This document shows positions 29,526 to 62,409 of a stretch of 64,000 nucleotides of DNA, piece by piece; the first letter of the stretch is position 1; every line of letters begins with the position of its first letter. The notes beneath the pieces were generated by a model, which was not told the DNA's origin, did not search any database, and saw nothing but the letters and a program-made list of their open reading frames with translations. The stretch is from IMG/VR virus record IMGVR_UViG_3300028592_000004, positions 165,211-229,210 of that record; one strand, 5' to 3'. Position numbers and translations under genes: made by a program.

Positions 29526-30188
29526 TCAGCCGGCCTTCGGTGCCAGAAAGTCTGCAACTTCCGATGTCTTCTCCTGCGGCACAACGAGCGTGTTGTGGAA
29601 GGCCGTTCCCGTCTTCCACCCCTGAACGATGTGCTGCATCCCTTCGCGGAGACCCCGTACCCGGTTGTGGATCCGGTCCATTTCGCGGGTGTTCCAGAGG
29701 CCGGGAACGAAGAGGGCCGAGCCGCCAGCCTTGTAGAAGCGAAGGCACTGATGGAGTGTGTCGTCGATCAGGACCGCACCAGGCTTCGCCAACTCCTGCT
29801 TGTGGTTCCCGATGAATGTCTGCGTCCGGAAGTGTTTCGGCAGGTGCTTGGCGACCCAGTCGATCTTGCCGGCAGAAGCAAAGGACAGACCCGGGTGCTC
29901 ACGATCGTGCATCCACGGCGGCGCGGTCAGAATGAACTGCTTGCTCCGCGGGAAGTGAGCGTCGACCAGTTGGAGGATGTCCTCCATGTACTCGGTCGGC
30001 TTGAGGTTCGCCCACCACTCATAGCTCGTCAGGCCGAAGAACGCGTCGTGTGTCACGCCCACAGCTCCGTAGAACTCGTACGGTTCAGTCGGTGGCGTTC
30101 GGTTGACCAGCTCGAAGGCAGCGGCGTGCATGTCAGCCAGCACACCGTCGAGGTCGATGTAACACACCGGTTCCGGTCTCTCACGCAT
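29526..30188 (-). CDS. HAD-family 5'(3')-deoxyribonucleotidase-like protein
   Basis: DLDGVLAD, ILT, K.DW, LIDD. Confidence 0.82.
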   Translation of the reverse strand: MRERPEPVCYIDLDGVLADMHAAAFELVNRTPPTEPYEFYGAVGVTHDAFFGLTSYEWWANLKPTEYMEDILQLVDAHFPRSKQFILTAPPWMHDREHPGLSFASAGKIDWVAKHLPKHFRTQTFIGNHKQELAKPGAVLIDDTLHQCLRFYKAGGSALFVPGLWNTREMDRIHNRVRGLREGMQHIVQGWKTGTAFHNTLVVPQEKTSEVADFLAPKAG

Positions 30189-30786
30189 GATCAATTCCCG
30201 CGGATTGAAATGTGGCGTTCAGCCACGGAAAGGGCACGTCCGGGATCGGCCGGCCCAGAAACTTGCAGAGGGGCTCCCACCCTTCTGTGATTCGCATGTA
30301 GAGCAGCTTGTCCGGACGTCCCAGGAAGTGCTGCCCGACTTCCTGCTTTCGCTGGCGGAACGCCTGTCGCAGAGTCTCGTCGTCGTTCGTGTGGACGCAG
30401 CCGAGGTTGAGGAGGCGAAGCAAGTCGGTCAGGTTTGCCCAACGTAGCGCTTCGATCGCACGACGGTTCACCCTGGCAAGCTGCCGCTGCATGGAGGCGA
30501 CCCATGCGTCTTCGTCGCGGTCGAGCAGGATGAAGCGAGCGTTCGGGTAGGCCCGGTCGAGTTCCCGAAACCGGAACGTCATAACGTTGATGACGGTGTC
30601 GAACTCTTCCAGCAAGCTGTAGTCGACCTTCCCTTGAAGGAGACAGTTCGTCGTGTCCTTCACGTGCCGCCCGGGGCAACCGTGCGTGACCTTGAAGCCA
30701 CCGAGGATGTTCAGAGCTTCGGCGAGTGAACAGGTGCCTGTCTTGGACAGACTCACGTCGAAGAGGAAGGGGTGGTTGTGATCCAT
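30181..30786 (-). CDS. Sulfotransferase-family P-loop protein
   Basis: SKTGTCSL, YPNARFIL, GWEPLCKFLG, PFPWLN. Confidence 0.85.
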   Translation of the reverse strand: MDHNHPFLFDVSLSKTGTCSLAEALNILGGFKVTHGCPGRHVKDTTNCLLQGKVDYSLLEEFDTVINVMTFRFRELDRAYPNARFILLDRDEDAWVASMQRQLARVNRRAIEALRWANLTDLLRLLNLGCVHTNDDETLRQAFRQRKQEVGQHFLGRPDKLLYMRITEGWEPLCKFLGRPIPDVPFPWLNATFQSAGIDHA

Positions 30787-30789
30787 CAG

Positions 30790-30860
30790 TTACCCCGCTG
30801 GGATTCGAACCCAGACTACCGGCACCAAAGACCGATGTGCTGCCGTTACACCACAGAGTA
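30790..30860 (-). tRNA. tRNA-Gln(TTG)
   Basis: Cloverleaf, loop CT-TTG-GT, T-loop GTTCGAATC. Confidence 0.88.
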
Positions 30861-31033
30861 AGCAAAAGACCCCGTCGCATGACAGGGTCTTTCGTGTCCC
30901 GGATCGCTATCGGAATGCCGAACGCACGCAACCAGATGGCCCTTTTGGGAACCACGAGCCGAAGCTCACAGAAGACTATTCGCTTTCCGGGCAATTCCAA
31001 CGGGATCCTAGCCGACAGTTGGGGGTTGAGCAA

Positions 31034-31104
31034 TACCGCGTATGGGATTCGAACCCACCTAAGCCGTTAGAAAGACGGCTGTCCTCCCCGAAGACGAACG
31101 CGGC
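31034..31104 (-). tRNA. tRNA-Glu(TTC)
   Basis: Stem GCCGT/ACGGC, loop CT-TTC-TA, T-loop GTTCGAATC. Confidence 0.8.
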
Positions 31105-31108
31105 ATAG

Positions 31109-31195
31109 CGGAAGTCGAGGGACTCGAACCCTCACACCCTTGCGGGCCGTCCAGGTAGCAACCGGCGCCGGCAAACCAGTGGCCGGATGACTTCC
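31109..31195 (-). tRNA. tRNA-Ser(GCT)
   Basis: Loop TT-GCT-AC, long variable arm, G73. Confidence 0.8.
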
Positions 31196-31198
31196 AAG

Positions 31199-31282
31199 CG
31201 GAAAGCCGAAGAATCGAACTCCACGCGTTTTACCGCGCCCCCGGTTTTCGAGACCAGTTTGCCTCCGTTGGCGGGACCTTCC
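31199..31282 (-). tRNA. tRNA-Ser(CGA)
   Basis: Loop CT-CGA-AA, long variable arm. Confidence 0.85.
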
Positions 31283-31287
31283 GTAAG

Positions 31288-31431
31288 TGACGATGCCAGG
31301 AATCGAACCTAGTGAGCAGGCCACATTGGCAGTACCTCCCGCCGCTCTGCATGCGAGCGGACAGTCCCTTCCACCGTTGGCTGATCTGCACTGGCCATAC
31401 ACCAGTCCCTCTGCCATTGAGGATCATCGTC
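31288..31431 (-). ncRNA. tRNA-like RNA (144 nt) with ~70-nt insertion in the variable region
   Basis: Acceptor GACGATG/CATCGTC, D arm CCTC/GAGG, stem ACTGG/CCAGT with loop TGTATGG, T arm CTAGG-TTCGATT-CCTGG. Confidence 0.65.
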
Positions 31432-31435
31432 AAAG

Positions 31436-31511
31436 TAGCAGCGACAGGGATCGAACCTGCATGCACACGGGTCTGAGCCGTGCCGCTCTGTCCAACATGG
31501 CGTACGCTGCC
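31436..31511 (-). tRNA. tRNA with CAG anticodon (Leu), short variable arm
   Basis: Stem CACGG/CCGTG, loop CT-CAG-AC, 5-nt variable loop. Confidence 0.78.
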
Positions 31512-31515
31512 GTCT

Positions 31516-31785
31516 TTATCGACTGGCATCACCAGTCGCTCGCCTGTGATTACGAATCTGCTGGTGCGGTGAGGACGGCTCAGGATAGGGAACACTCGCC
31601 GACCGCACCGTCCATCCCGCTTCCCAGTTGCCATCTTCGTCACGCAGGCGAATCATGCGGCCGACGATAGCGAACTTGGCGGGAATCCAACTCGTGGTTC
31701 GCTCTAATCCACGAGGGGTTAGTCGCTCCAGGAGGCATTGACAGTACAGGTCGCGAGAACGGGATGGAGTATGAGGTGCAAACAT
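31516..31785 (-). CDS. Hypothetical protein within the tRNA cluster
   Basis: 89-aa ORF with RBS AGGAG. Confidence 0.6.
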   Translation of the reverse strand: MFAPHTPSRSRDLYCQCLLERLTPRGLERTTSWIPAKFAIVGRMIRLRDEDGNWEAGWTVRSASVPYPEPSSPHQQIRNHRRATGDASR

Positions 31786-31798
31786 GATGGTCTCCTAG

Positions 31799-31881
31799 TA
31801 CCGAGAGCCGGAGTCGAACCGACAAGATCGCAATGATGGCGAGTCTACAGCTCGCGGGGCCTTCCAATGCCCAATCTCGGT
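31799..31881 (-). tRNA. tRNA-Tyr(GTA)
   Basis: Stem GCGAG/CTCGC, loop CT-GTA-GA, long variable arm. Confidence 0.85.
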
Positions 31882-31969
31882 GGGGCGGGCCACTTCACCT
31901 GATCCGAGTCCGGGAGTGGTGTCACAAGCACCTTCCCTTCTGTCAGGCCGTAGTACCCGTACGGACGTG

Positions 31970-32039
31970 AGACGCCGGTCAGTGTCGAGCTGACCTCACC
32001 ATCGTTTGCTGCGACGGGCCATCCCGGATGGACGGCGTC
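31970..32039 (-). tRNA. Degenerate tRNA-Cys(GCA)-like gene
   Basis: Acceptor GACGCCG/CGGCGTC+U73, loop CA-GCA-AA (A33), T-loop CTCGACA, tiny D loop. Confidence 0.55.
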
Positions 32040-32109
32040 TTGTGGCTGCGACGGGCGGTAAACCGCCACCGCGACGTCTACGCGGTGTCCAAACGTCGCA
32101 GCCTTTGAG

Positions 32110-32182
32110 CACAGCCCCAGGGAATCGAACCCTGCCAATCGAATTTGGAGTTCGACTCGCCAGCCTTGGATCATTGGGCCGT
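32110..32182 (-). tRNA. tRNA-Trp(CCA)
   Basis: Stem TCGAA/TTCGA, loop CT-CCA-AA; D arm weak. Confidence 0.75.
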
Positions 32183-32188
32183 GTGAGG

Positions 32189-32260
32189 CCGGAGCGACCG
32201 GAATCGAACCGGTGACCACCGGGTTTCAACCGATGACTCTACCAACTGAGTTACGCTCCG
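32189..32260 (-). tRNA. tRNA-Phe(GAA)
   Basis: Canonical D arm (CTCAGTTGGTAGAG), loop TT-GAA-AC. Confidence 0.9.
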
Positions 32261-32498
32261 AAATGGAACGCTCGGTAGGGTCTGTTGTCGAAGAGACTGT
32301 CTGCCGAGCTGCCTTAGAGGCAATACCACTCGAACGACTCAAGGGCGCACAAGAGGCCGGATGAGCGTTCAAGGGAACTCAGGCTAAACAGTTCGCGGGC
32401 CATTTGATTTTGTCTCAGGAGGACGGGCAGCCAAGCGGCTGCCCGTCTCACTTCCCACTCAGGAGGCTCGGGTTTGATACCGAAGCATCGACTCCTGA

Positions 32499-32526
32499 AG
32501 CATACCTGCGATCAATCAGCTGTCAA
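32499..32526 (-). promoter_or_regulatory. Sigma70-type promoter upstream of the tRNA cluster
   Basis: TTGACA-N16-TATGCT on the minus strand in an intergenic region. Confidence 0.65.
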
Positions 32527-32533
32527 GCAGAGA

Positions 32534-33091
32534 TTATGGATGCCACACCTCATGGTTCATCAGGCCCTCGCAACCACCGAGTGGACCCTCGACGACGCGG
32601 TACTCAATGCCAGCCTTCTTGATCCGAGCCACGCCCTTCGAAACTGTCTGAGCGTATTTCTTGTAGGTCCGATCCAGTGCCGGTTTGTGGACCACGACAG
32701 CTTTCAGCCCCGCCATGATGACGGCCCGCGCACAGCGCTCGCAGATGGCCCAAGGGCAGTAGAGGATGGCGCCACGGGTAACGATCCCAGACCGAGCCGC
32801 GGTGAAGATGACGTCTTCCTCGGCATGGACGACTATGTCGTCCTTCACCTTCAGGTTTTCTTCGGTCGGCTCGAAGCCGAAGGGCAACCGGTTACAGCCA
32901 TAGATCAGCAGCGCGTCTCGATCATCTTCTGTTGCGAGCAGGGACCCGTTCTTCGTTTTCGGGTCGTCGCTCTTCTCTGCAGCGACCTGGTAGCACAGAC
33001 GGAGCGCGGTGCGGTCTGTACGGCCTTCGTCTATCTCCTTGGATCGCTTCAGCAGGGTGAGGAGATTGTGCGGCCGGGTCTTGTCTTCCAT
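32534..33091 (-). CDS. dCMP deaminase
   Basis: HAEE and PWAICERC zinc motifs; RBS AAGGAGG before MEDKT. Confidence 0.88.
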   Translation of the reverse strand: MEDKTRPHNLLTLLKRSKEIDEGRTDRTALRLCYQVAAEKSDDPKTKNGSLLATEDDRDALLIYGCNRLPFGFEPTEENLKVKDDIVVHAEEDVIFTAARSGIVTRGAILYCPWAICERCARAVIMAGLKAVVVHKPALDRTYKKYAQTVSKGVARIKKAGIEYRVVEGPLGGCEGLMNHEVWHP

Positions 33092-33195
33092 GACGTGAGC
33101 CTCCTTGCTCAACGCACCTTAGACCTTCTGATAGCTAAAGAAAAGCACCTGGCCCGGCCGAAGCCGGGCATGATGCTCGTAGATCAGGAGAAACG

Positions 33196-33475
33196 AGAGG
33201 GTCTCCCGGCGCTGTCATTGTTGCGTCCAACTCGAACGTCGGGAGACCCTCTTCAGGCATACAAAGCCCAGGCGACGGGAACGGATATTGAGGCGGGCCA
33301 GCACTCGCACCGCTCGACCGCCGCCTGGGACTACGAAACCCGATCACAGGAACAAGAGCAGGCGGGCCAGCTCTACCCTCGCTCAACTGTGATCGGGCTT
33401 GAATGTGAAAGACCGCCGAACATGACGTACGGGAAGGGAACGTCTGAGGGTAACCTTCCCAGATCGGCTCGACGG
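33196..33475 (-). ncRNA. Cluster of structured RNA modules, including a Y-RNA-like unit (33413-33475)
   Basis: Consecutive long hairpins; two share GGAAC..GGCGGGCCAGC..CGCTC (plus strand); the third has the same CGAACATG..GGTAAC..TCGGCTCG signature as the Ro60-adjacent array. Confidence 0.6.
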
Positions 33476-33659
33476 GCCAGAGGAACCGACGTCCAGGCTG
33501 GGATTAACAGCTGGCTGCCAGTTTCGAGAGCGTTTTTCGCCACCTCTCTCGTGGGCGACCGCGGACGGCCAGGAACGTTCCTGGCAATCCGGCCGGCTGA
33601 GCCGGCATAGCAGTTCACAACAAACGAACTGCAGCCACGGTGGGCTCTCGCCGCTCCCG

Positions 33660-34301
33660 TTATACCCAGTGCGCTGTTGCCTTGGCAGCGAAACCGATCA
33701 GCCAGGTGTACCCGCAGATCCCGGCGGAGATCCCGAGCGTCCGAGCCACTTCGGCTCCTTCCTCGGCCGTCTTCTTCGCCGCGGCCTCAACACCGACCGA
33801 ACGTGATGTTCGCAGGACGAGGTGGATCACGCGAACACTGTCACCACCAAGCCTGGATTCGAAGCTCCGCGGCATTGCGGTCGGCTCGTCGGAAATGCAG
33901 ATCGAGATCTCGTCTGGCGCCGTTCGCTGAAGGATGGCCGCTCGACTCGGCTTTGTATCCTGCTCCTTCTCATACCCCAGGCACTCGAAGATCGGCTGAG
34001 TCGTCAGCCCCGTGCGACGAACCCGCTGAACACGGAAGATACTGTTGCCGTGCTCGATCTCTTTGCCGTCGACGATCCGCATCTCGTGGACCATCATCGT
34101 CCGGTTGTCGAGGGAGCGGAGCGAAAGGAACGTCTCTCCGGTCGGCTGGATCTTGCCGTTGCACTCTTCGTACACCAGCTTGAACCGGCCGGTCACGGCG
34201 TCGATGCCGAGACCTTCTCGGAGCTGGGCTTCGGTGTCGTCGGCCAGAGCCGGCACCGCGATCAGACACGCCACAAACATGAACGCAAGCTGACGAAACA
34301 T
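33660..34301 (-). CDS. Secreted protein, possibly TIGR03067-like (planctomycete) domain
   Basis: Signal peptide; ISICIS..P..PRSFES segment resembles the family. Confidence 0.55.
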   Translation of the reverse strand: MFRQLAFMFVACLIAVPALADDTEAQLREGLGIDAVTGRFKLVYEECNGKIQPTGETFLSLRSLDNRTMMVHEMRIVDGKEIEHGNSIFRVQRVRRTGLTTQPIFECLGYEKEQDTKPSRAAILQRTAPDEISICISDEPTAMPRSFESRLGGDSVRVIHLVLRTSRSVGVEAAAKKTAEEGAEVARTLGISAGICGYTWLIGFAAKATAHWV

Positions 34302-34493
34302 GACTCGGCTCCTCAGAAATGGAAAGACCCAGGCGGAATGCCTGGGTCTTGTGGGCTAAGTGAATCCACTATGTTTATTGACGCGTTTCGGAGCGGAATT
34401 TAGGTCTCCAAACGCCTTCGGCGCTTGCCTCGCTCGTATCCGCTCACGTAATCGACGCCCCGTCGCTTGGACATCGGTCGAGCGCTGAACGCG

Positions 34494-35144
34494 TCATTGA
34501 AGCCGCGCTGCCATTCTCTCCGCGCTGGCGACGGTGGACTCGGTGATTTTGTCGACAACGACGATCTCCTCGGCTTTGACCGGGGTGAATGATCCAATCA
34601 TTCCGACAGTCACTTTCCCATGTACTGCGAAGATCGGGACGATCTCACAGTCGACCCAGGCGACTTTTGCGTCTGGGGTGATCCGGAATCGCATCCGGAA
34701 CATCCGGGCCTCCGCAACCGCGGCTGCCCAGTCTGCCGTCACGGCCGGCCGGTCCTGCGGGTGAATCGCAGCCTTCCAGCCGTGACCGAGCGCTTCTTCC
34801 AGGGTAAGCCCCGTCAGGTATCGCCACTCAGGCGAAACCCAGACGCAGTACCCGTGCTCGTCCGTCTGAATGACAGCCAGGGCCAGGTCGGAGACGATCC
34901 GTTGGACCATGCCATTCATGCGCACGAGGCCGTGCTCGATCCGATTGATCGAGTCCTTCATCGTCGAACCAGAGTTGGTCGAGAACTGATCGGCGATGGA
35001 GTTCAGCGTGGAGTACGCCTTGTGGAGGTTCACCCCGAGGCGAACGAATCCAAAAATGGCCCCACACAGTCCGGATCCGCCACCGATCAACCAGGCCCAA
35101 AATTCCCAGCTCGACAGCCAGGTCGTGATCAGGTTGTCTCCCAT
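34494..35144 (-). CDS. Membrane-anchored PAS-domain protein
   Basis: N-terminal TM helix; TDEHG..WVS..W..LTG..EEALGHGW..AIHPQDR PAS signature. Confidence 0.85.
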   Translation of the reverse strand: MGDNLITTWLSSWEFWAWLIGGGSGLCGAIFGFVRLGVNLHKAYSTLNSIADQFSTNSGSTMKDSINRIEHGLVRMNGMVQRIVSDLALAVIQTDEHGYCVWVSPEWRYLTGLTLEEALGHGWKAAIHPQDRPAVTADWAAAVAEARMFRMRFRITPDAKVAWVDCEIVPIFAVHGKVTVGMIGSFTPVKAEEIVVVDKITESTVASAERMAARLQ

Positions 35145-35223
35145 CCAGACGCCTCCTTGCGTGCGGGGTCGAAGGATGCAGCCTAAACCACCTCAAGGGA
35201 CCGCTCAAGGTCCGGGTTTTCCC

Positions 35224-36117
35224 TTACCCGTGCTGGGTGAGCCACTCCAGGTACACCGGAAGGTTCTCCTTCAGGCGCCGGATCGGCTTGTACGCCATCT
35301 TCTGCCGGGCCTTCGAGATGTTGCACAGCGTGAACGCCTGGTAGTTCCGACCGTACGGATTCGGGATCCACTCAACCTCCCAGTCGTTCCCGAAGATCAT
35401 GATCGCCAGGTCCCGGAAGGACGTCGCGACGCCGGACCCGATGTTGAAGATGTCGCTCATCTGGTGGAAGCCGGCCCGATGGAACGCCTGAACGGCGTCA
35501 TCGACGTGCAGCCAATCCCGCTGCTGACTTCCATCCTCGAACAGCTTTGGAGTCTCGCCGCGGAGCTTGGTCTTGAGCAGCTGATGCACCATGCTCGCAC
35601 GGAGCCCCTTGTGGGACTCACCCGGGCCGTAGGTGTTGCACAGCCGCAGACCGACTGCGTTGATCCCGTGGTTTTCAGCGACCTGTTGAACCGCCCGCTC
35701 CATGTTGAGCTTGCTCTGTCCGTACAGGTTGCAGGTTCCCACCGGAGTGACGCCCTCCACGTACGGCGCCGGCGCATCGCCATAGACAGCTGTCGAGCTG
35801 GCGTAGACGAACTGAGGACAGCCACGACTGATGACCTGGTCCATCAGGCGCATCGTGTCGGCAACGTTGATCCGGTCGTAGGCCCCGGCATCTTCACCGC
35901 GGGTGTCGTTCAAGGCGGCAAGGTGATAGCAGACGTCAATCTTCTTCGGCAGATCGTCCGGGGAGATCCCGTACAACCCTCGGTAGATCGGAATACCGGG
36001 CGGCACATTGCCGTTTCCACCGGTCACGGAATAGACCTCCTGTCCATACGCAACGAGGGAAGCGGCCAGGGCTCGGCCGATAAAACCGGACGCGCCGGTC
36101 ACCAGTGCAACGGTCAT
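35224..36117 (-). CDS. NAD-dependent epimerase, ADP-L-glycero-D-manno-heptose-6-epimerase-like
   Basis: TGASGFIG, YASS.AVYG, YGQSK, YGPGESHKG..ASMV. Confidence 0.85.
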   Translation of the reverse strand: MTVALVTGASGFIGRALAASLVAYGQEVYSVTGGNGNVPPGIPIYRGLYGISPDDLPKKIDVCYHLAALNDTRGEDAGAYDRINVADTMRLMDQVISRGCPQFVYASSTAVYGDAPAPYVEGVTPVGTCNLYGQSKLNMERAVQQVAENHGINAVGLRLCNTYGPGESHKGLRASMVHQLLKTKLRGETPKLFEDGSQQRDWLHVDDAVQAFHRAGFHQMSDIFNIGSGVATSFRDLAIMIFGNDWEVEWIPNPYGRNYQAFTLCNISKARQKMAYKPIRRLKENLPVYLEWLTQHG

Positions 36118-36353
36118 GAGTCCTCCAGAAGAATGCCAAGAACACGACAGAACAGAGCAATGAGCCGCATCGCAATGAAGGAATGCAGCATCAGCGAGAA
36201 GCCAGTTATCATCTGCCCTTCGGACGGGAGCCGAGCCAGGGCAAGGAGCGCGAACATGATGCAGCAGCCGATGAGAAAGCGCCAGCTGATCCAGCTGACC
36301 GTATCAGCCGCAGAAATCCATTCCTCCGAGCTCAACTGCATGCCGGCCTCCAT
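36114..36353 (-). CDS. Small membrane protein
   Basis: Two hydrophobic helices; ATGA overlap. Confidence 0.5.
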   Translation of the reverse strand: MEAGMQLSSEEWISAADTVSWISWRFLIGCCIMFALLALARLPSEGQMITGFSLMLHSFIAMRLIALFCRVLGILLEDS

Positions 36354-36375
36354 CCATAGGGGTGTGGGATTGTAG

Positions 36376-36852
36376 TCAGGCCGCTTCCTGAATTGCGACC
36401 TGACCGTAGTAGGCCACCGACTTTCGGGTCAGGCCCTGGTCCGCCATGTCACGAAGCATCTCGCTGTTCATCCAGCGGAGTTCGAGGTGCTCGTCCGACA
36501 GCCGCGGCGGCTGATCCGGATTCTTCGGCTTTGCAACATAGATCAGACACTGATGTGAGTGCGTCGGCGTGATCGGATGAACGTCGACGAACCGCGGTCT
36601 GGGCATCGGGGTGATGTCCGGTTCCAGCTGAGGCGGCACCTCGGCCAGGATCTCGACTTCGAGCCCGGTCTCTTCGTCAGTCTCGCGATGGAGTGCGGCG
36701 AGGACTGTCTCGTTGATTTCGATATGACCGCCGATCGGCAGCCACAGGCCGATCTTCTTGTGGTGGCACATCAGGACTTGGCCGTGCATAACGATGTAGA
36801 GGGCAACGGTCCAGTCGAGAGCGTAAAAGATGTGGGGCAACGTGGTCTCCAA
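36376..36852 (-). CDS. NUDIX hydrolase
   Basis: GGHIEINETVLAALHRETDEETGL Nudix box. Confidence 0.9.
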   Translation of the reverse strand: METTLPHIFYALDWTVALYIVMHGQVLMCHHKKIGLWLPIGGHIEINETVLAALHRETDEETGLEVEILAEVPPQLEPDITPMPRPRFVDVHPITPTHSHQCLIYVAKPKNPDQPPRLSDEHLELRWMNSEMLRDMADQGLTRKSVAYYGQVAIQEAA

Positions 36853-36904: not shown

Positions 36905-38530
36905 CTACTTCACGAAGCTCGCCATCACGGCAGGAACGTCGGCCGACGCGCCGACGATGTCGAGCTGACCGGCATCCTTCGGGTCAGCGACCGAGAACCG
37001 CGTGGCCGTCAAAGCACACACGATGAGTTTGGCCGGACGGTTCATCTGCTCGCGGTACATCTGCAGGGCCTGGGAGGCGTGGATCTGCCCCGCCCAGCTC
37101 TCGTTGTCCGTGTAGATGACGAAGACGTCGACCTCGATCTTGTGGGCCAGAGCGTACAACATCGGCAGGGCGCAGTCGGTCCCACCGAAGTTGAGCTTCC
37201 GCATCTCAGCGATCGCTGTCGGAATCGTGTCCCGGACGCCAATCGCCAACGGCGTCACCGCCGCAGTGTCGTACCGGCCGTTACGACCCGCCGTGAAGGC
37301 AACGACATGCGTCTCCTCTTCCGTCCGGATCGGGATCAGAGCCAGAGCCGTCGCCGCCTCCGCCGCCGAGAGACCGGGCACGCTCGCGACGTGGCTACTG
37401 TGCATACTCCCGCTGACGTCGACGCCGAGCAGGTACTTCTTGTTCGTCGGCTCCAGGTACTGGAAGGCCTTGTAGAAGCCGTCGTCGAGGGCGGAGATGA
37501 TCCGTTGATCGACGTTCCAGGTCAGGGACCCCTTCACACCCTTACCGTTCGCGTAGACCTTCGAAGCGAGCAGAAGAGCGAACGGGTGGACCCGTTCCTT
37601 CTTCAGCCGATCCGGGTTGGTCAAGGCGTTCGTGACGAACCTGGTCGTGCTCGACAACGGCTTGATGAGGTCGATGGACGTCATCTTGCCGAGGTTTCGC
37701 ACCATCGCCGTCAGCCCCATGTGCGGCAGGAGGGCCTCCCACACCTTCGGCTCGTTGAGGTACTCGGTCGGGATCGCTTCCCGCGGCAGCTGGTACGTCT
37801 CGATCGCCTTGATGATCTCCTTGGCCGACGTCGCCGCCTTCGCAGCTTCGAAGCCCAGAATCGCGGGAGCCTCGCTGCCGGCACGGCCGTGGGCGATCCA
37901 GTCGAACACCTTGCCGTGCGGACTGTCGGAAGGCACCTTCGGCTTCGACAGCCGGAGGACGTCGCGATGGGACCACGCCTTGCCGCCTTCCGAGACGACT
38001 CGCGACTGATACTTGACGGCCTGATAGGCAGCCTGATCCGCCGGCCGGCTGAGATACCAATTCTGAATGGCACGCTTGAGGCCGCGACCCCAGCCCCGGA
38101 ACTGCTCGACGGCATCGACGAACTGGAACAGGTGATAGCCCGTCCGGCAGATGTCGTTCAACGCAGCGAGGGCCTGCTGACCGAGCTCTTCCTTCTGGCC
38201 GGCGAGGTACGCCAGGACGAAGACCGCCTGGTCGTTCTTCGGCGCCAGGGCTTCGAGGCTGATCCGGCGGGTCATTTCGAGGACACGCTTGGCGTCCTCC
38301 TGCACGCACTTGGCCAGGACGGCGATGCTGTCCTGCGTCATCTTCTGTTCGGTGACGTAGTACGATCCGCCCATCGTGCCGAGGATCAGGAAGCGTTCAA
38401 GCTGCTTCCAGTGATCAACGACGAACGAGAAGCCGCCAGCGTTGTTTTTCTCCATCGGCTTGCCGGGGATCGGCTGCGACTGCGGAGTCTGACGGGTGGA
38501 AGCCGAACGTGCGTAGCGTGACGCGTTCAT
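36905..38530 (-). CDS. rsr: Ro60-related TROVE + vWA domain RNA-binding protein
   Basis: NNAGG, RFLILG, GWGR, KYQSR, SHRDVLRL, DVSGSM (MIDAS), GGTDC, YTDNE. Confidence 0.95.
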   Translation of the reverse strand: MNASRYARSASTRQTPQSQPIPGKPMEKNNAGGFSFVVDHWKQLERFLILGTMGGSYYVTEQKMTQDSIAVLAKCVQEDAKRVLEMTRRISLEALAPKNDQAVFVLAYLAGQKEELGQQALAALNDICRTGYHLFQFVDAVEQFRGWGRGLKRAIQNWYLSRPADQAAYQAVKYQSRVVSEGGKAWSHRDVLRLSKPKVPSDSPHGKVFDWIAHGRAGSEAPAILGFEAAKAATSAKEIIKAIETYQLPREAIPTEYLNEPKVWEALLPHMGLTAMVRNLGKMTSIDLIKPLSSTTRFVTNALTNPDRLKKERVHPFALLLASKVYANGKGVKGSLTWNVDQRIISALDDGFYKAFQYLEPTNKKYLLGVDVSGSMHSSHVASVPGLSAAEAATALALIPIRTEEETHVVAFTAGRNGRYDTAAVTPLAIGVRDTIPTAIAEMRKLNFGGTDCALPMLYALAHKIEVDVFVIYTDNESWAGQIHASQALQMYREQMNRPAKLIVCALTATRFSVADPKDAGQLDIVGASADVPAVMASFVK

Positions 38531-38607
38531 GGGAAGCCTTTCCTACAAAAGAAAACGCCGAACAGGATGCTCGGCGTGAGTGGTCAGCGAGGCCCGCTGA
38601 AAGAATC

Positions 38608-38740
38608 CGTGAACATGGGGCTGATGTCCCTGTTTGACGTGTGCTATCTACTACACTACGGCCCCGTGAAAGAGGGGCCGCTGGGAGTTGCACCCAGGCT
38701 ACGCGATTGGAAATCGATAAGGAACGTCATTCGGCTCACG
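38608..38740 (-). ncRNA. Y RNA-like 1 (YrlA type, with permuted tRNA domain)
   Basis: Terminal helix CGTGAGCCGA/ATGTTCACG; internal T arm, loop-closed acceptor stem, D arm. Confidence 0.8.
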
Positions 38741-38748
38741 AATGCGAA

Positions 38749-38881
38749 ATCACGAACATGGAAGTTGGCATCCAGTCAATTCTTGTGCTCTACCGCTGAG
38801 CTACAGCGCCTTTCGACGCCGACTGGATTTGAACCAGTGACCCCAAGATCCGATGAGAACAGATACCGATCGGCTCGTGAT
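38749..38881 (-). ncRNA. Y RNA-like 2 (YrlA type)
   Basis: ATCACGAGCCGA/ATGTTCGTGAT helix; GGTTCAAATCC T arm, then TAGCTCAGCGGTAGAGC D arm. Confidence 0.82.
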
Positions 38882-38888
38882 GTTTTGA

Positions 38889-38955
38889 ACTGCGAACATG
38901 GAAGTCGTCGAGGGAGTCATCTTAACAGGATAACCCTCAGCATTCGGCTCGCAGT
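38889..38955 (-). ncRNA. Y RNA-like 3 (short, no tRNA domain)
   Basis: ACTGCGAGCCGA/ATGTTCGCAGT helix, shared GTTATC motif. Confidence 0.7.
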
Positions 38956-38963
38956 GTCTGGAG

Positions 38964-39091
38964 CCGTGAACATGAAATTGCAAGTCCGCGTTTTGGTCTC
39001 GTGCTCTACCGATTGAGCTACATGGGCTTCCGCCCCTGGACGGATTCGAACCGCCAACCTCAAGAGATAACGAACTAACTTCGGCTCACGG
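38964..39091 (-). ncRNA. Y RNA-like 4 (YrlA type)
   Basis: CCGTGAGCCGA/ATGTTCACGG helix; GGTTCGAATCC T arm, then TAGCTCAATCGGTAGAGC D arm. Confidence 0.82.
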
Positions 39092-39100
39092 TGTATTGAA

Positions 39101-39176
39101 CCCGAACGTGGGACCAACAGAAGGCGTTTTGGGCTCCGGTTGGGGAGCAAAGGTAACCGTCTGTCTTCGGCTCGGG
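39101..39176 (-). ncRNA. Y RNA-like 5 (short, no tRNA domain)
   Basis: CCCGAGCCGA/ACGTTCGGG helix, GTTACC motif. Confidence 0.7.
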
Positions 39177-39180
39177 AAGG

Positions 39181-39278
39181 CGGGCGATGGAGGAATCGAA
39201 CCTTCGGTAACGATCATCAGTCGGCTCGTTTCCGAGCATGGAATTGACAATCGGTTGCACACCAACGTGCGATCGCCC
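39181..39278 (-). ncRNA. tRNA-shaped RNA with the Ro-binding-like helix in place of the anticodon arm (permuted Y RNA)
   Basis: Acceptor GGGCGAT/ATCGCCC, T arm GAAGG-TTCGATT-CCTCC, internal ATGCTCG-GAAA-CGAGCCGA. Confidence 0.68.
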
Positions 39279-39545
39279 AGTTGGACGGAGTCTACCGACT
39301 CCGTCCTTGATTGCAAGACCAGACACGCGGTCTAGGTCGTCGGTTCACCCTCGGCGGGCGGATTCGAAGCCGGATCCTTGGCCGGATCCCGCAGCAAGTT
39401 CGGAGGCATCACCATGTACATCCCCATCGGAGAGGTGCAGGCCACGACGATTTGCCCCGAGAAGGCAATGAGAAAAATGTCCACAACGTACCGCACGAAA
39501 TTGCGCAACATGGAACATCTCCGGACAGACGAGCTTGTCCGCGGC

Positions 39546-62305: not shown

Positions 62306-62335
62306 TGTGAGGTCCTCCTTCTGAAATGAACCCTG

Positions 62336-62409
62336 TGTCGGGGGCGGGATTCGAACCCGCAACCAACGGATTTGAAGTCCGGTGCTCTAACCATTTGAGC
62401 CACCCCGAC
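62336..62409 (-). tRNA. tRNA with UCA anticodon (opal suppressor; not tRNA-Sec)
   Basis: Acceptor GTCGGGG/CCCCGAC+A73, D arm GCTC/GAGC, loop CT-TCA-AA, short variable loop, T arm GCGGG-TTCGAAT-CCCGC. Confidence 0.9.

What the first reader, a model, noticed from the sequence alone, without database searches (positions are those of the whole stretch)
33140..33655. Second ~500-nt non-coding island of repeated structured modules, one Y-like
Seen: no credible ORF. Long hairpins lie at 33196-33252, 33267-33329 and 33339-33397; the last two share internal GGAAC, GGCGGGCCAGC and CGCTC despite unrelated outer stems. 33413-33475 has the full Y-like signature although it is 5 kb from the array. More hairpins follow to ~33650. 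Inference: orphan Y RNAs plus a related new motif, or one large phage ncRNA.
Basis: partly seen in the sequence, partly recalled or inferred. Interest (0 to 1): 0.6.

Follow-up and report, generated by a model that had tools for sequence, protein, structure and literature searches.

The report
Phage RNA island: Y-like plus host hairpins
A 568-base gene-free stretch of a 229-kb soil phage is a string of RNA hairpins: one is an extra copy of the phage's Y-like RNAs (partners of its Ro60 protein), and two belong to a previously uncatalogued terminator-like hairpin family otherwise found only in one genus of soil Planctomycetota, which points to the phage's host.

Summary
Window 33092-33659 has no ORF with a coding signature and folds far better than shuffles. 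The stronger fold, the G.U pairs, the terminator and all flanking genes put it on the MINUS strand.

It is about ten separate hairpins ending in a canonical intrinsic terminator (33143-33178 plus a U-tract).

The module at 33410-33478 carries the signature of the phage's Y-like array in front of Ro60: GAGCCGA, GGUUAYC, CAUGUUCG. It has the same predicted stem, bulged C and upper stem as array member 38888-38958. It has no tRNA-like domain and no Rfam YrlA hit, so it is a short, YrlB-type Y-like paralogue.

The two "related" hairpins (33337-33399, 33266-33330) are not shown to be Y relatives. They belong to a real 63-nt hairpin family:
- 47 distinct copies, 92% of cells paired, 19 of 26 pairs with compensatory changes.
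- Absent from Rfam 15.
- About 38 copies in one 8.4-Mb Planctomycetota genome and 8 in its sister species.
- None in about 420 other Planctomycetota genomes sampled.
- Usually followed by a U-tract.

Transcription, Ro60 binding and the hairpins' role are inferred, not shown. No homologues were found for the other modules.

The parts
33660..34301 (-). Upstream gene (213 aa, no Pfam family). Its stop codon abuts the island.
   Evidence: ORF list. Coding GC3 0.76. No Pfam hit. Only itself in the protein collection, within the 0.55-1.75x length limit of that search.
33610..33632 (-). H1: 8-bp hairpin with a 7-nt loop.
   Evidence: Fold. Unique in the genome. No homologue found.
33592..33606 (-). 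H2: GCCGGC-UCA-GCCGGC hairpin.
   Evidence: Fold.
33561..33593 (-). H3: hairpin around the perfect 16-nt palindrome CCAGGAACGUUCCUGG.
   Evidence: Fold. The palindrome is unique in the genome.
33525..33551 (-). H4: 6-bp hairpin with an internal loop.
   Evidence: Fold.
33484..33523 (-). H5: hairpin. It is followed by a third CUGGCCCG word at 33473-33480.
   Evidence: Fold. Word positions.
33410..33478 (-). Yo: orphan short Y-like RNA module. Layout: lower stem CCGUCGAGC/GUUCGGCGG, bulged C, GGUUACC loop region, CAUGUUCG 3' strand. No tRNA-like domain.
   Evidence: Signature match against a chance expectation of 0.01. Only minus-strand non-array copy in the 229-kb genome. Fold parallel to array member 38888-38958, z -2.7. 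Alignment A3. No Rfam YrlA hit.
33337..33399 (-). M2: member of the new 63-nt hairpin family. Layout: 13-bp outer stem, UU bulge, GAGCG/UGUUC helix, apical GC-UGGCCC-GC.
   Evidence: Model R1 scores 76.1 bits, E 4e-16. Family covariation.
33266..33330 (-). M1: second member of the same family, 6 nt downstream of M2.
   Evidence: Model R1 scores 63.8 bits, E 4e-13. The core is 94-97% identical over 32-34 nt to host-genus copies.
33194..33255 (-). L: long hairpin (12-bp GC-rich stem, about 31-nt structured interior) followed by GUUUCUCCU.
   Evidence: Fold at -35 kcal/mol. Weak terminator-like call. No homologue found.
33137..33178 (-). T: canonical intrinsic terminator, GCCCGGC-UUCG-GCCGGGC within a longer stem, then UUUUCUUU.
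   Evidence: Fold. Terminator scan. Weak Rfam matches are to terminator parts of unrelated sRNAs only.
32534..33106 (-). Downstream gene: cytidine/dCMP deaminase (ATG at 33091) with Shine-Dalgarno AAGGAGG at 33100-33106.
   Evidence: Pfam PF00383, E 2.6e-10. Sequence read directly.

Best explanation
The gap between the 213-aa gene and the deaminase gene is a minus-strand, non-coding RNA island. It is about ten independent hairpin modules closed by a canonical intrinsic terminator.

Module Yo (33410-33478) is a short Y-like RNA without a tRNA domain. It is paralogous to the array in front of the phage's Ro60 gene. Most likely it is a further Ro60 ligand of the YrlB/Yrn2 'long hairpin' type.

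Modules M2 and M1 are not Y RNAs. They are two copies of a 63-nt hairpin RNA family that one uncultured soil Planctomycetota genus carries in about 8-40 chromosomal copies. Those copies lie in intergenic DNA and are usually followed directly by a U-tract. The family therefore behaves as a sequence-conserved, one-directional intrinsic-terminator or 3'-end hairpin. Its invariant junction (GGU-Y-GAGC / GUUCC-Y-G, with a conserved G.U pair) and its apical CUGGCCCGCC are probably read by a host factor.

The phage most likely acquired them from its host. It would use them to end or stabilise the small RNAs of the island ahead of the deaminase and tRNA genes.

Shown: non-coding status, folds, strand asymmetry, paralogy of Yo, family membership and covariation of M1/M2, their taxonomic distribution, and the U-tails.

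Inferred: transcription, processing into separate RNAs, Ro60 binding, the termination or stability role, a host factor, and the direction of transfer.
For: Non-coding status.

Minus strand:
- All neighbouring genes, the tRNAs and the Y array are on the minus strand.
- The minus strand folds 32 kcal/mol better.
- The terminator with its U-tract exists only on the minus strand.

Yo:
- Signature against a chance expectation of 0.01.
- Same architecture as array member Yd, with different, complementary stem sequences.
- The array itself gives YrlA hits of 37 and 32 bits beside a TROVE + vWA_Ro60 gene.
- Short hairpin Y RNAs and phage Ro60-Yrl pairs are documented (PMC4201824; PMC12135203).

M family:
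- 15 seed members from a metagenome scan with 11-15-bp covarying outer stems.
- In 47 distinct sequences, 92% of cells pair, against 40-52% when partners are slid. 19 of 26 pairs show compensatory change. 0 of 500 shuffles reach this.
- There are many G.U pairs.
- 32 of 47 copies have at least 5 U in the 10 nt downstream. Only 1 of 47 has at least 5 A upstream.

Distribution:
- 38 copies in G213 and 8 in G001, which are the 2 species of one genus.
- None in the other genomes of the phylum, order and family samples.
- Copies are intergenic, next to unrelated genes.
- Hairpins identical to G213 copies occur in contigs of the phage's own sample series.
Against: - No RNA data. All six runs that hold the DNA are DNA runs.
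- Yo has GCCGAU where the published Y motif has GNCGAA. It lies 3.4 kb from Ro60, with four genes between.
- The phage's M2 and M1 have poor U-tails (3 and 5 U of 10), so they may not terminate.
- In the host genomes, about a third of the resolvable M copies are not downstream of a co-oriented gene.
- H1-H5 and L have no homologue anywhere searched, so their function rests on folding energy alone.
- No close relative of the phage was found, so conservation of the island cannot be tested.
Confidence: 0.5

Rival explanations
1. M1 and M2 are selfish or hitch-hiking host repeats (REP/MITE-like small mobile hairpins). They landed in a permissive phage intergenic region and do nothing for the phage. 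The rest of the island is an ordinary 3' UTR plus terminator.
For: - The family is multicopy, dispersed, intergenic and restricted to one genus. It sometimes sits in tandem or in arrays, as REP/BIME elements do.
- No other virus contig carries it: one weak 23-bit hit that looks like chance.
- Both host genomes encode Y1 (IS200/RAYT-type) transposases.
Against: - Outer stems differ widely between copies, with compensatory changes, rather than being near-identical.
- Conserved G.U pairs and one-sided U-tails point to selection on RNA.
- No M hairpin flanks any of the Y1 transposase genes.
- No target duplications or terminal repeats were seen.
Confidence: 0.2
2. The island is one large structured phage ncRNA whose hairpins assemble into a single functional fold.
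For: The whole 568 nt folds with z -7.3. The MFE contains a weak closing helix between its 5' end and the region after hairpin L.
Against: - Nearly all the predicted energy lies in local hairpins that fold the same way in isolation.
- The modules have separate evolutionary origins: Yo from the Y array, M1/M2 from a host family.
- There is no Rfam large-RNA hit.
- No homologue exists to test long-range covariation.
Confidence: 0.08
3. All modules, M1/M2 included, are Ro60 ligands. That would make the island a second Y-RNA locus whose M-type hairpins are a divergent Y class.
For: - M hairpins and the phage's Y-like stems share the helix base GAGC/GUUC with the same G.U pair.
- They sit next to a Y-like module in a phage that encodes Ro60.
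- Bacterial Ro60 proteins are reported to bind several unlike RNAs (PMC4201824).
Against: - M lacks the GNCGAA/CGAA motif and the bulged C.
- No TROVE match was found in G001, though that genome is incomplete.
- G213 has only a 22%-identical Ro60-like gene, at least 160 kb from any M copy.
- Four shared base pairs are within chance.
Confidence: 0.1
4. The island works as DNA: a replication origin, a packaging site or an operator cluster built from inverted repeats.
For: There are many inverted repeats, including a perfect 16-bp palindrome at 33569-33584.
Against: - No GC-skew turn, no AT-rich stretch, and GC content equal to the genome average.
- None of the repeats recurs elsewhere in the genome.
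- The strand asymmetry of folding, the G.U pairs and the U-tract fit RNA.
Confidence: 0.05

Closest known systems
Bacterial and phage Y RNAs: YrlA (Rfam RF02553), YrlB/Yrn2, and Thermus phage phiLo Yrl1/Yrl2
   Same: - Yo lies on the same strand as a Ro60 (TROVE + vWA) gene.
- It has a 5'/3' stem with a bulged C and a CCGA-containing 5' strand.
- It is a long hairpin like YrlB/Yrn2.
- Phage Ro60 with its own Y-like RNAs is documented (PMC4201824; PMC12135203).
   Different: - No tRNA-like domain, and no Rfam YrlA hit.
- The motif reads GCCGAU rather than GNCGAA.
- It lies 3.4 kb downstream of Ro60 with four genes between, rather than directly upstream.
- Ro60 binding is untested.
TRIT, the sequence-conserved Rho-independent terminator motif of Mycobacterium (RNIE paper, PMC3152330)
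   Same: Both are lineage-restricted, multicopy hairpins conserved in sequence and structure. In both, the conservation suggests a factor that reads the hairpin.
   Different: - TRIT has 147 copies, is mostly palindromic and bidirectional, and sits around position -8 of stop codons.
- The M family has about 40 copies and is one-directional (G.U pairs, one-sided U-tail).
- M lies 33-490 nt from stop codons or away from co-oriented genes.
- M has a bulged junction and a conserved apical loop.
- M is also carried by a phage.
REP/BIME elements and their RAYT transposases
   Same: Short GC-rich extragenic hairpins, multicopy, sometimes clustered, restricted to narrow lineages.
   Different: - M outer stems vary and covary.
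- There is no conserved 5' GTAG-type tetranucleotide.
- No copies lie next to the Y1 transposase genes.
Phage-borne copies of host RNA elements used as mimics, such as RNA anti-CRISPRs built from solitary repeats (from my own knowledge, not checked here)
   Same: A phage carries one or two copies of a short structured host RNA element that a host protein is likely to bind.
   Different: The host element here is not a CRISPR repeat. No binding protein is known. A decoy role is pure conjecture.

Membership tests
Y RNA (bacterial/phage, sensu Chen et al. 2014) | Encoded near a Ro60/Rsr gene on the same strand | tested here: inconclusive
   Yo is on the same strand as Ro60 (36905-38530), but it starts 3.4 kb downstream with four genes between. 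The characterised bacterial Y RNAs in the paper lie within 2 kb of Rsr.
Y RNA (bacterial/phage, sensu Chen et al. 2014) | GNCGAAN0-1G (CGAA) motif near the 5' end | tested here: not met
   Yo reads GCCGAUCUG, which matches five of the six fixed positions (A to U at position 6). Array members Yb, Yc, Yd and Yf match exactly. Array member Ye has the same U.
Y RNA (bacterial/phage, sensu Chen et al. 2014) | Stem formed by the 5' and 3' ends, with a bulged helix at the Ro60 site | tested here: met
   The predicted fold has a 9-bp lower stem, a bulged C after GAGC, then a short helix, an internal loop and an upper stem. Array member Yd folds the same way. This is a prediction only.
YrlA (Rfam RF02553) | tRNA-like domain (T and D arms) and a score above the gathering cut-off of 69 bits | tested here: not met
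   No YrlA match at E<=10 in 33050-33700. Only 40 nt lie between the two strands of the stem. The array members themselves reach only 37 and 32 bits.
Y RNA (any) | Binds Ro60 | not testable with these tools
   Needs EMSA or RIP with the phage Ro60.
This phage's own Y-like module family | GAGCCGA ... GGUUAYC ... CAUGUUCG on the minus strand within a closing stem | tested here: met
   The only copy outside the array in the 229-kb genome.
M hairpin family (model R1, defined here) | Full-length match to the covariance model: 13-bp outer stem, 2-nt bulge, GAGC/GUUC helix, apical CUGGCCCGCC | tested here: met
   M2 scores 76.1 bits and M1 63.8 bits, both over model positions 1-63. The reverse strand of M1 scores 19 bits. 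Caveat: both phage copies were among the 15 seed sequences (as L136). The other 45 distinct members support the family independently.
Intrinsic (Rho-independent) terminator | GC-rich hairpin directly followed by a U-tract | tested here: met
   Met for T (33137-33178) and for 32 of 47 M-family copies. Weak for the phage's own M2 (3 U of 10) and M1 (5 U of 10).
REP / RAYT system | Near-identical repeats, with copies flanking a RAYT (Y1 transposase) gene | tested here: not met
   Y1 transposase genes exist in both genomes, but no M hairpin lies within their loci. Stems are variable.
Any Rfam 15 family | cmscan match | tested here: not met
   Nothing relevant at E<=10 on the island or on a host array.

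The most novel reading that the evidence does not exclude
The M hairpin is the recognition element of a dedicated, still unknown RNA-binding factor of one Planctomycetota genus, for example a termination, 3'-end protection or RNA-decay factor. The jumbo phage carries two tandem copies next to a Y-like RNA in order to hijack or titrate that factor. Alternatively, it presents such stable 3' hairpins to its own Ro60/Y RNA machinery together with a host exonuclease. Either way, a phage Ro60 system would be linked to a specific class of host structured RNAs.
Probability: 0.15. Interest if true: 0.8.

Novelty: new variant of a known kind. Interest (0 to 1): 0.55.

Why it matters
1. It adds a well-supported structured RNA family (47 distinct members, strong covariation) that Rfam lacks. 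The phylum is one whose RNA biology is little known to me. The family looks like a second example, after mycobacterial TRIT, of a sequence-conserved terminator hairpin that implies a reading factor.

2. The family is confined to one two-species genus and recurs in the phage. It therefore gives a concrete host prediction for an uncultured 229-kb soil phage.

3. The phage keeps a Y-like RNA outside its Ro60-proximal array. Searches that look only next to Ro60 would miss such copies. This also gives a testable set of ligands (array RNAs, Yo, M1/M2) for a phage Ro60.

Tried and rejected
Searches for relatives of the phage, all empty or unhelpful:
- blastn of 1.9 kb against 50,697 phage records found nothing.
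- Protein-guided scans of viral contigs with both flanking genes found nothing.
- The word search with the 213-aa protein found only itself. That search sees only proteins of 0.55-1.75x the query length.
- The Ro60 scan found one relative at 45% identity (L123). It has no Rfam hit and no Y signature.

Pattern scans:
- A loose M pattern in viral contigs gave only chance or coding hits, e.g. a coding repeat in L011.
- Stricter patterns gave 0 hits, then 1 weak hit.
- The Y-signature pattern in viral contigs gave 120 hits. Only two have even a 4-bp closing stem, and neither looks like a Y module.

Reads:
- 1,901 letters were laid, under the 6,000 limit.
- There were no variants inside the island.
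- Short pieces of foreign contigs matched the M1/M2 cores. This was the lead that prompted the metagenome scan.
- No RNA run is available.

Other checks:
- Homologues of H1-H5, Yo and L in the host-genus genomes or in any fetched locus: none.
- More M or M-like hairpins elsewhere in the phage: none.
- K-turn, integron attC, group II intron domain 5, CsrA-type GGA loops and riboswitch readings of M were compared with the sequence by eye. All were dropped because the defining positions do not fit. These comparisons rest on my own knowledge plus the empty Rfam scans.
- The host module preceding M in the arrays (L274, L270, L166) was tested as a Y-like counterpart. The folds were inconsistent.
- Literature searches for the motif words and for Planctomycetes hairpin repeats found nothing relevant.

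No genetic code other than table 11 was used.

Full report
**Setting.** The window is the last 64 kb of a 229,210-bp IMG/VR virus record from soil. Around the finding every gene is on the minus strand:
- a 213-aa ORF with no Pfam family (33660-34301);
- a cytidine/dCMP deaminase (32534-33091, with AAGGAGG 8 nt before its ATG);
- PAS, epimerase and NUDIX genes;
- a Ro60 orthologue (TROVE + vWA_Ro60, 36905-38530);
- seven tRNA genes at 30789-32260.

In front of Ro60 lies an array of Y-like RNAs (about 38550-39330). It gives sub-threshold Rfam YrlA matches of 37 and 32 bits and is closed by a terminator at 38577-38555.

**Checking the observation.** The 568 nt between the two genes contain no ORF with the local coding signature. 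The island ORFs have GC3 0.50-0.69 and GC2 0.59-0.74. Seven neighbouring genes have GC3 0.73-0.86 and GC2 0.37-0.51. The island ORFs also have no Pfam hit.

The stretch folds much better than shuffles on both strands, and best on the minus strand: -283 kcal/mol (z -7.3) against -251 kcal/mol (z -5.4). Folded piece by piece, it resolves into ten local hairpins:
- H1-H5 (33484-33632);
- Yo (33410-33478);
- M2 (33337-33399);
- M1 (33266-33330);
- L (33194-33255);
- T (33143-33178), followed by UUUUCUUU.

T is a textbook intrinsic terminator on the minus strand. The point to add is the strand.

**The Y-like module.** The array members share three elements inside a closing stem: GAGCCGA(A/U), a GGUUAYC-type element, and CAUGUUC. 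The pattern GAGCCGA-N(20-50)-CATGTTCG is expected 0.01 times in the window. It occurs twice, in the array (38893-38950) and at 33417-33470. In the whole genome the strict signature occurs on the minus strand only in the array and here, apart from one long-gap match inside coding sequence.

Yo and array member Yd have the same predicted architecture: lower stem, bulged C after GAGC, short helix, internal loop, upper stem. Their stem sequences are different but complementary. The fold z-scores are -2.7 and -3.2.

Yo has no tRNA-like domain and therefore no YrlA hit. In that respect it resembles the 'long hairpin' Y RNAs YrlB and Yrn2 described beside YrlA (PMC4201824). Its 5' strand reads GCCGAU where the published motif is GNCGAA. 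One array member has the same change. Phage Ro60 proteins that bind phage-encoded Y-like RNAs are documented (PMC12135203).

I therefore call Yo a Y-like paralogue and a likely Ro60 ligand. Strict family membership is not demonstrated.

**The two related hairpins.** M2 and M1 share GAGCG-N8-GCUGGCCCGCCU-N(7-9)-GUUCC inside unrelated 12-13-bp outer stems. Laying soil contigs on the region showed short pieces of foreign contigs matching just these cores. That prompted a pattern scan of metagenome contigs, which returned 74 loci. Fifteen distinct hits have uninterrupted 11-15-bp outer stems of quite different sequence. The rest are coding look-alikes.

RNAalifold gives one hairpin with 26 pairs, 15 of them with compensatory changes. 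A covariance model (R1) then recovered 55 matches, 47 of them distinct, from the fetched loci. On that alignment:
- 92% of cells pair, against 40-52% when partners are slid by 1-3 columns;
- 19 of 26 pairs show changes on both sides;
- 0 of 500 shuffles reach any of the five measures.

The alignment is fitted to the model, so these numbers lean towards the structure. The seed alignment made by MAFFT shows the same picture, however.

The invariant parts are the junction and the apical CUGGCCCGCCU. The junction reads GGU-Y-GAGC-R opposite GUUCC-Y-G, with a 2-nt bulge and a conserved G.U pair. Frequent G.U and U.G pairs mean the structure exists on this strand only. Rfam 15 has nothing like it, and a literature search for the motif words found nothing relevant.

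**Where the family lives.** In the species-representative genome collection, the exact pattern with a true hairpin occurs only in one MAG, titled 'Planctomycetota bacterium'. That MAG (G001) has 8 copies. Its only congener in the genome set (G213, 8.4 Mb, one contig) has 38 copies at E<=1e-3, scattered over the chromosome with some local clusters.

No other genome matched among 150 sampled from the phylum, 149 from the order and 119 from the family. These were samples scored with strict filters, so this means 'not found in those searched', not 'absent'.

Copies lie in intergenic DNA next to unrelated genes: Hsp20, DUF1275, radical SAM, DUF1501, aldehyde dehydrogenase and a ParB-like gene. Of 18 loci I could resolve by eye:
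- 12 are downstream of a co-oriented gene;
- 3 are upstream of a co-oriented gene;
- 3 are antisense to both neighbours.

Thirty-two of 47 copies have at least 5 U in the 10 nt after the hairpin. Only 1 of 47 has at least 5 A before it. So the element behaves as a one-directional, intrinsic-terminator-like 3' hairpin.

In G213 and in a related metagenome contig, several hairpins with the same junction but other apices stand in arrays in a conserved order. Y1 transposase genes exist in both genomes but are not flanked by M hairpins. G001 shows no TROVE match, though it is incomplete. G213 has only a 22%-identical Ro60-like gene, far from any copy. The family is therefore not tied to Ro60.

Hairpins identical to G213 copies, flanks included, occur in contigs from the same sample series as the phage. 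The phage has exactly two copies. No other IMG/VR contig has a convincing one.

**Interpretation.** The closest precedent for M is TRIT, the sequence-conserved terminator hairpin of mycobacteria. Its conservation was taken to imply a factor that binds the hairpin (PMC3152330). M differs in being directional, bulged and far less numerous, and in being present in a phage.

I think the most likely reading runs as follows. The island is transcribed with, or just after, the upstream gene. It yields a short Y-like RNA for the phage Ro60. It uses two host-type 3' hairpins, hairpin L and terminator T to end or stabilise these RNAs before the deaminase and tRNA genes. The phage's M copies have weak U-tails, so stabilisation or protein binding may matter more than termination.

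The rivals are:
- selfish host repeats with no role for the phage;
- one large RNA;
- a divergent Y class;
- a DNA-level element.

They are set out with their tests in the Rival explanations section. None is excluded, but each has specific evidence against it. There is no GC-skew turn or AT-rich stretch that would suggest an origin.

**Limits.**
- No RNA evidence exists for this phage.
- No relative of the phage was found, so H1-H5, L and the island as a whole cannot be tested by covariation.
- Gene calls in host loci are my own crude GC3-based calls.
- The names of G213 and of the genus are not given by the tools. The phylum comes from one record title.
- Both phage copies were part of the seed of model R1.

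Noticed in passing
window 39181-39278 (-): A tRNA-shaped RNA at the head of the Y array. It has an acceptor stem GGGCGAU/AUCGCCC, a D arm, a T arm with UUCGAUU and a 3' GCC. Its anticodon arm is replaced by a Y-type stem closed by a loop (CCAUGCUCGG-AAAC-GAGCCGACUG). This is in effect a circular permutation of the YrlA layout. Rfam tRNA scores it only 19 bits.
   Followed up: partly
window 38550-39330 (-), 36905-38530 (-): An array of at least five or six Y-like RNAs lies upstream of a phage Ro60 gene. Some have T- and D-arm tRNA-like domains and one is a short hairpin. A terminator (38577-38555) separates the array from Ro60. The Rfam YrlA hits are far below the gathering score, so this is a divergent Y lineage.
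   Followed up: partly
window 62335-62409 (-): A tRNA with anticodon UCA, called tRNA-SeC by ARAGORN and scoring 74 bits with the Rfam tRNA model. It could be a selenocysteine tRNA or an opal-suppressor tRNA of the phage.
   Followed up: no
L274 1160-1700; L270 1420-1700; L166 640-1200 (-): The host-genus genome G213 and a related soil contig hold conserved arrays of four to six hairpins. All have the GGUY-GAGC...GUUCC junction but different apices, and each usually has a U-rich tail. This could be a multi-hairpin ncRNA locus or a stack of terminators. One array follows an ECF-type sigma factor gene.
   Followed up: partly
L287 548-672 (+), upstream of ORF 793-2382: G213 has a distant Ro60-like gene (529 aa, 22% identical to the phage protein). 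Upstream of it lies an unusually AT-rich stretch with CGGCCGAGACUUAGGAUAAC ... GGUGAACCGCCGGCCG that could be a host Y RNA. The fold is not better than shuffles (z -0.6).
   Followed up: partly
window 33473-33480 (-): A third copy of the word CUGGCCCG, the apical core of the M hairpins, lies just 5' of Yo and overlaps its closing stem. It may be chance or a remnant of a third M module.
   Followed up: no
window 29526-36852 (-): The genes around the RNA islands look metabolic or regulatory rather than structural: 5'-nucleotidase-like, sulfotransferase, dCMP deaminase, a PAS-domain protein, an NAD-dependent epimerase and NUDIX.
   Followed up: no
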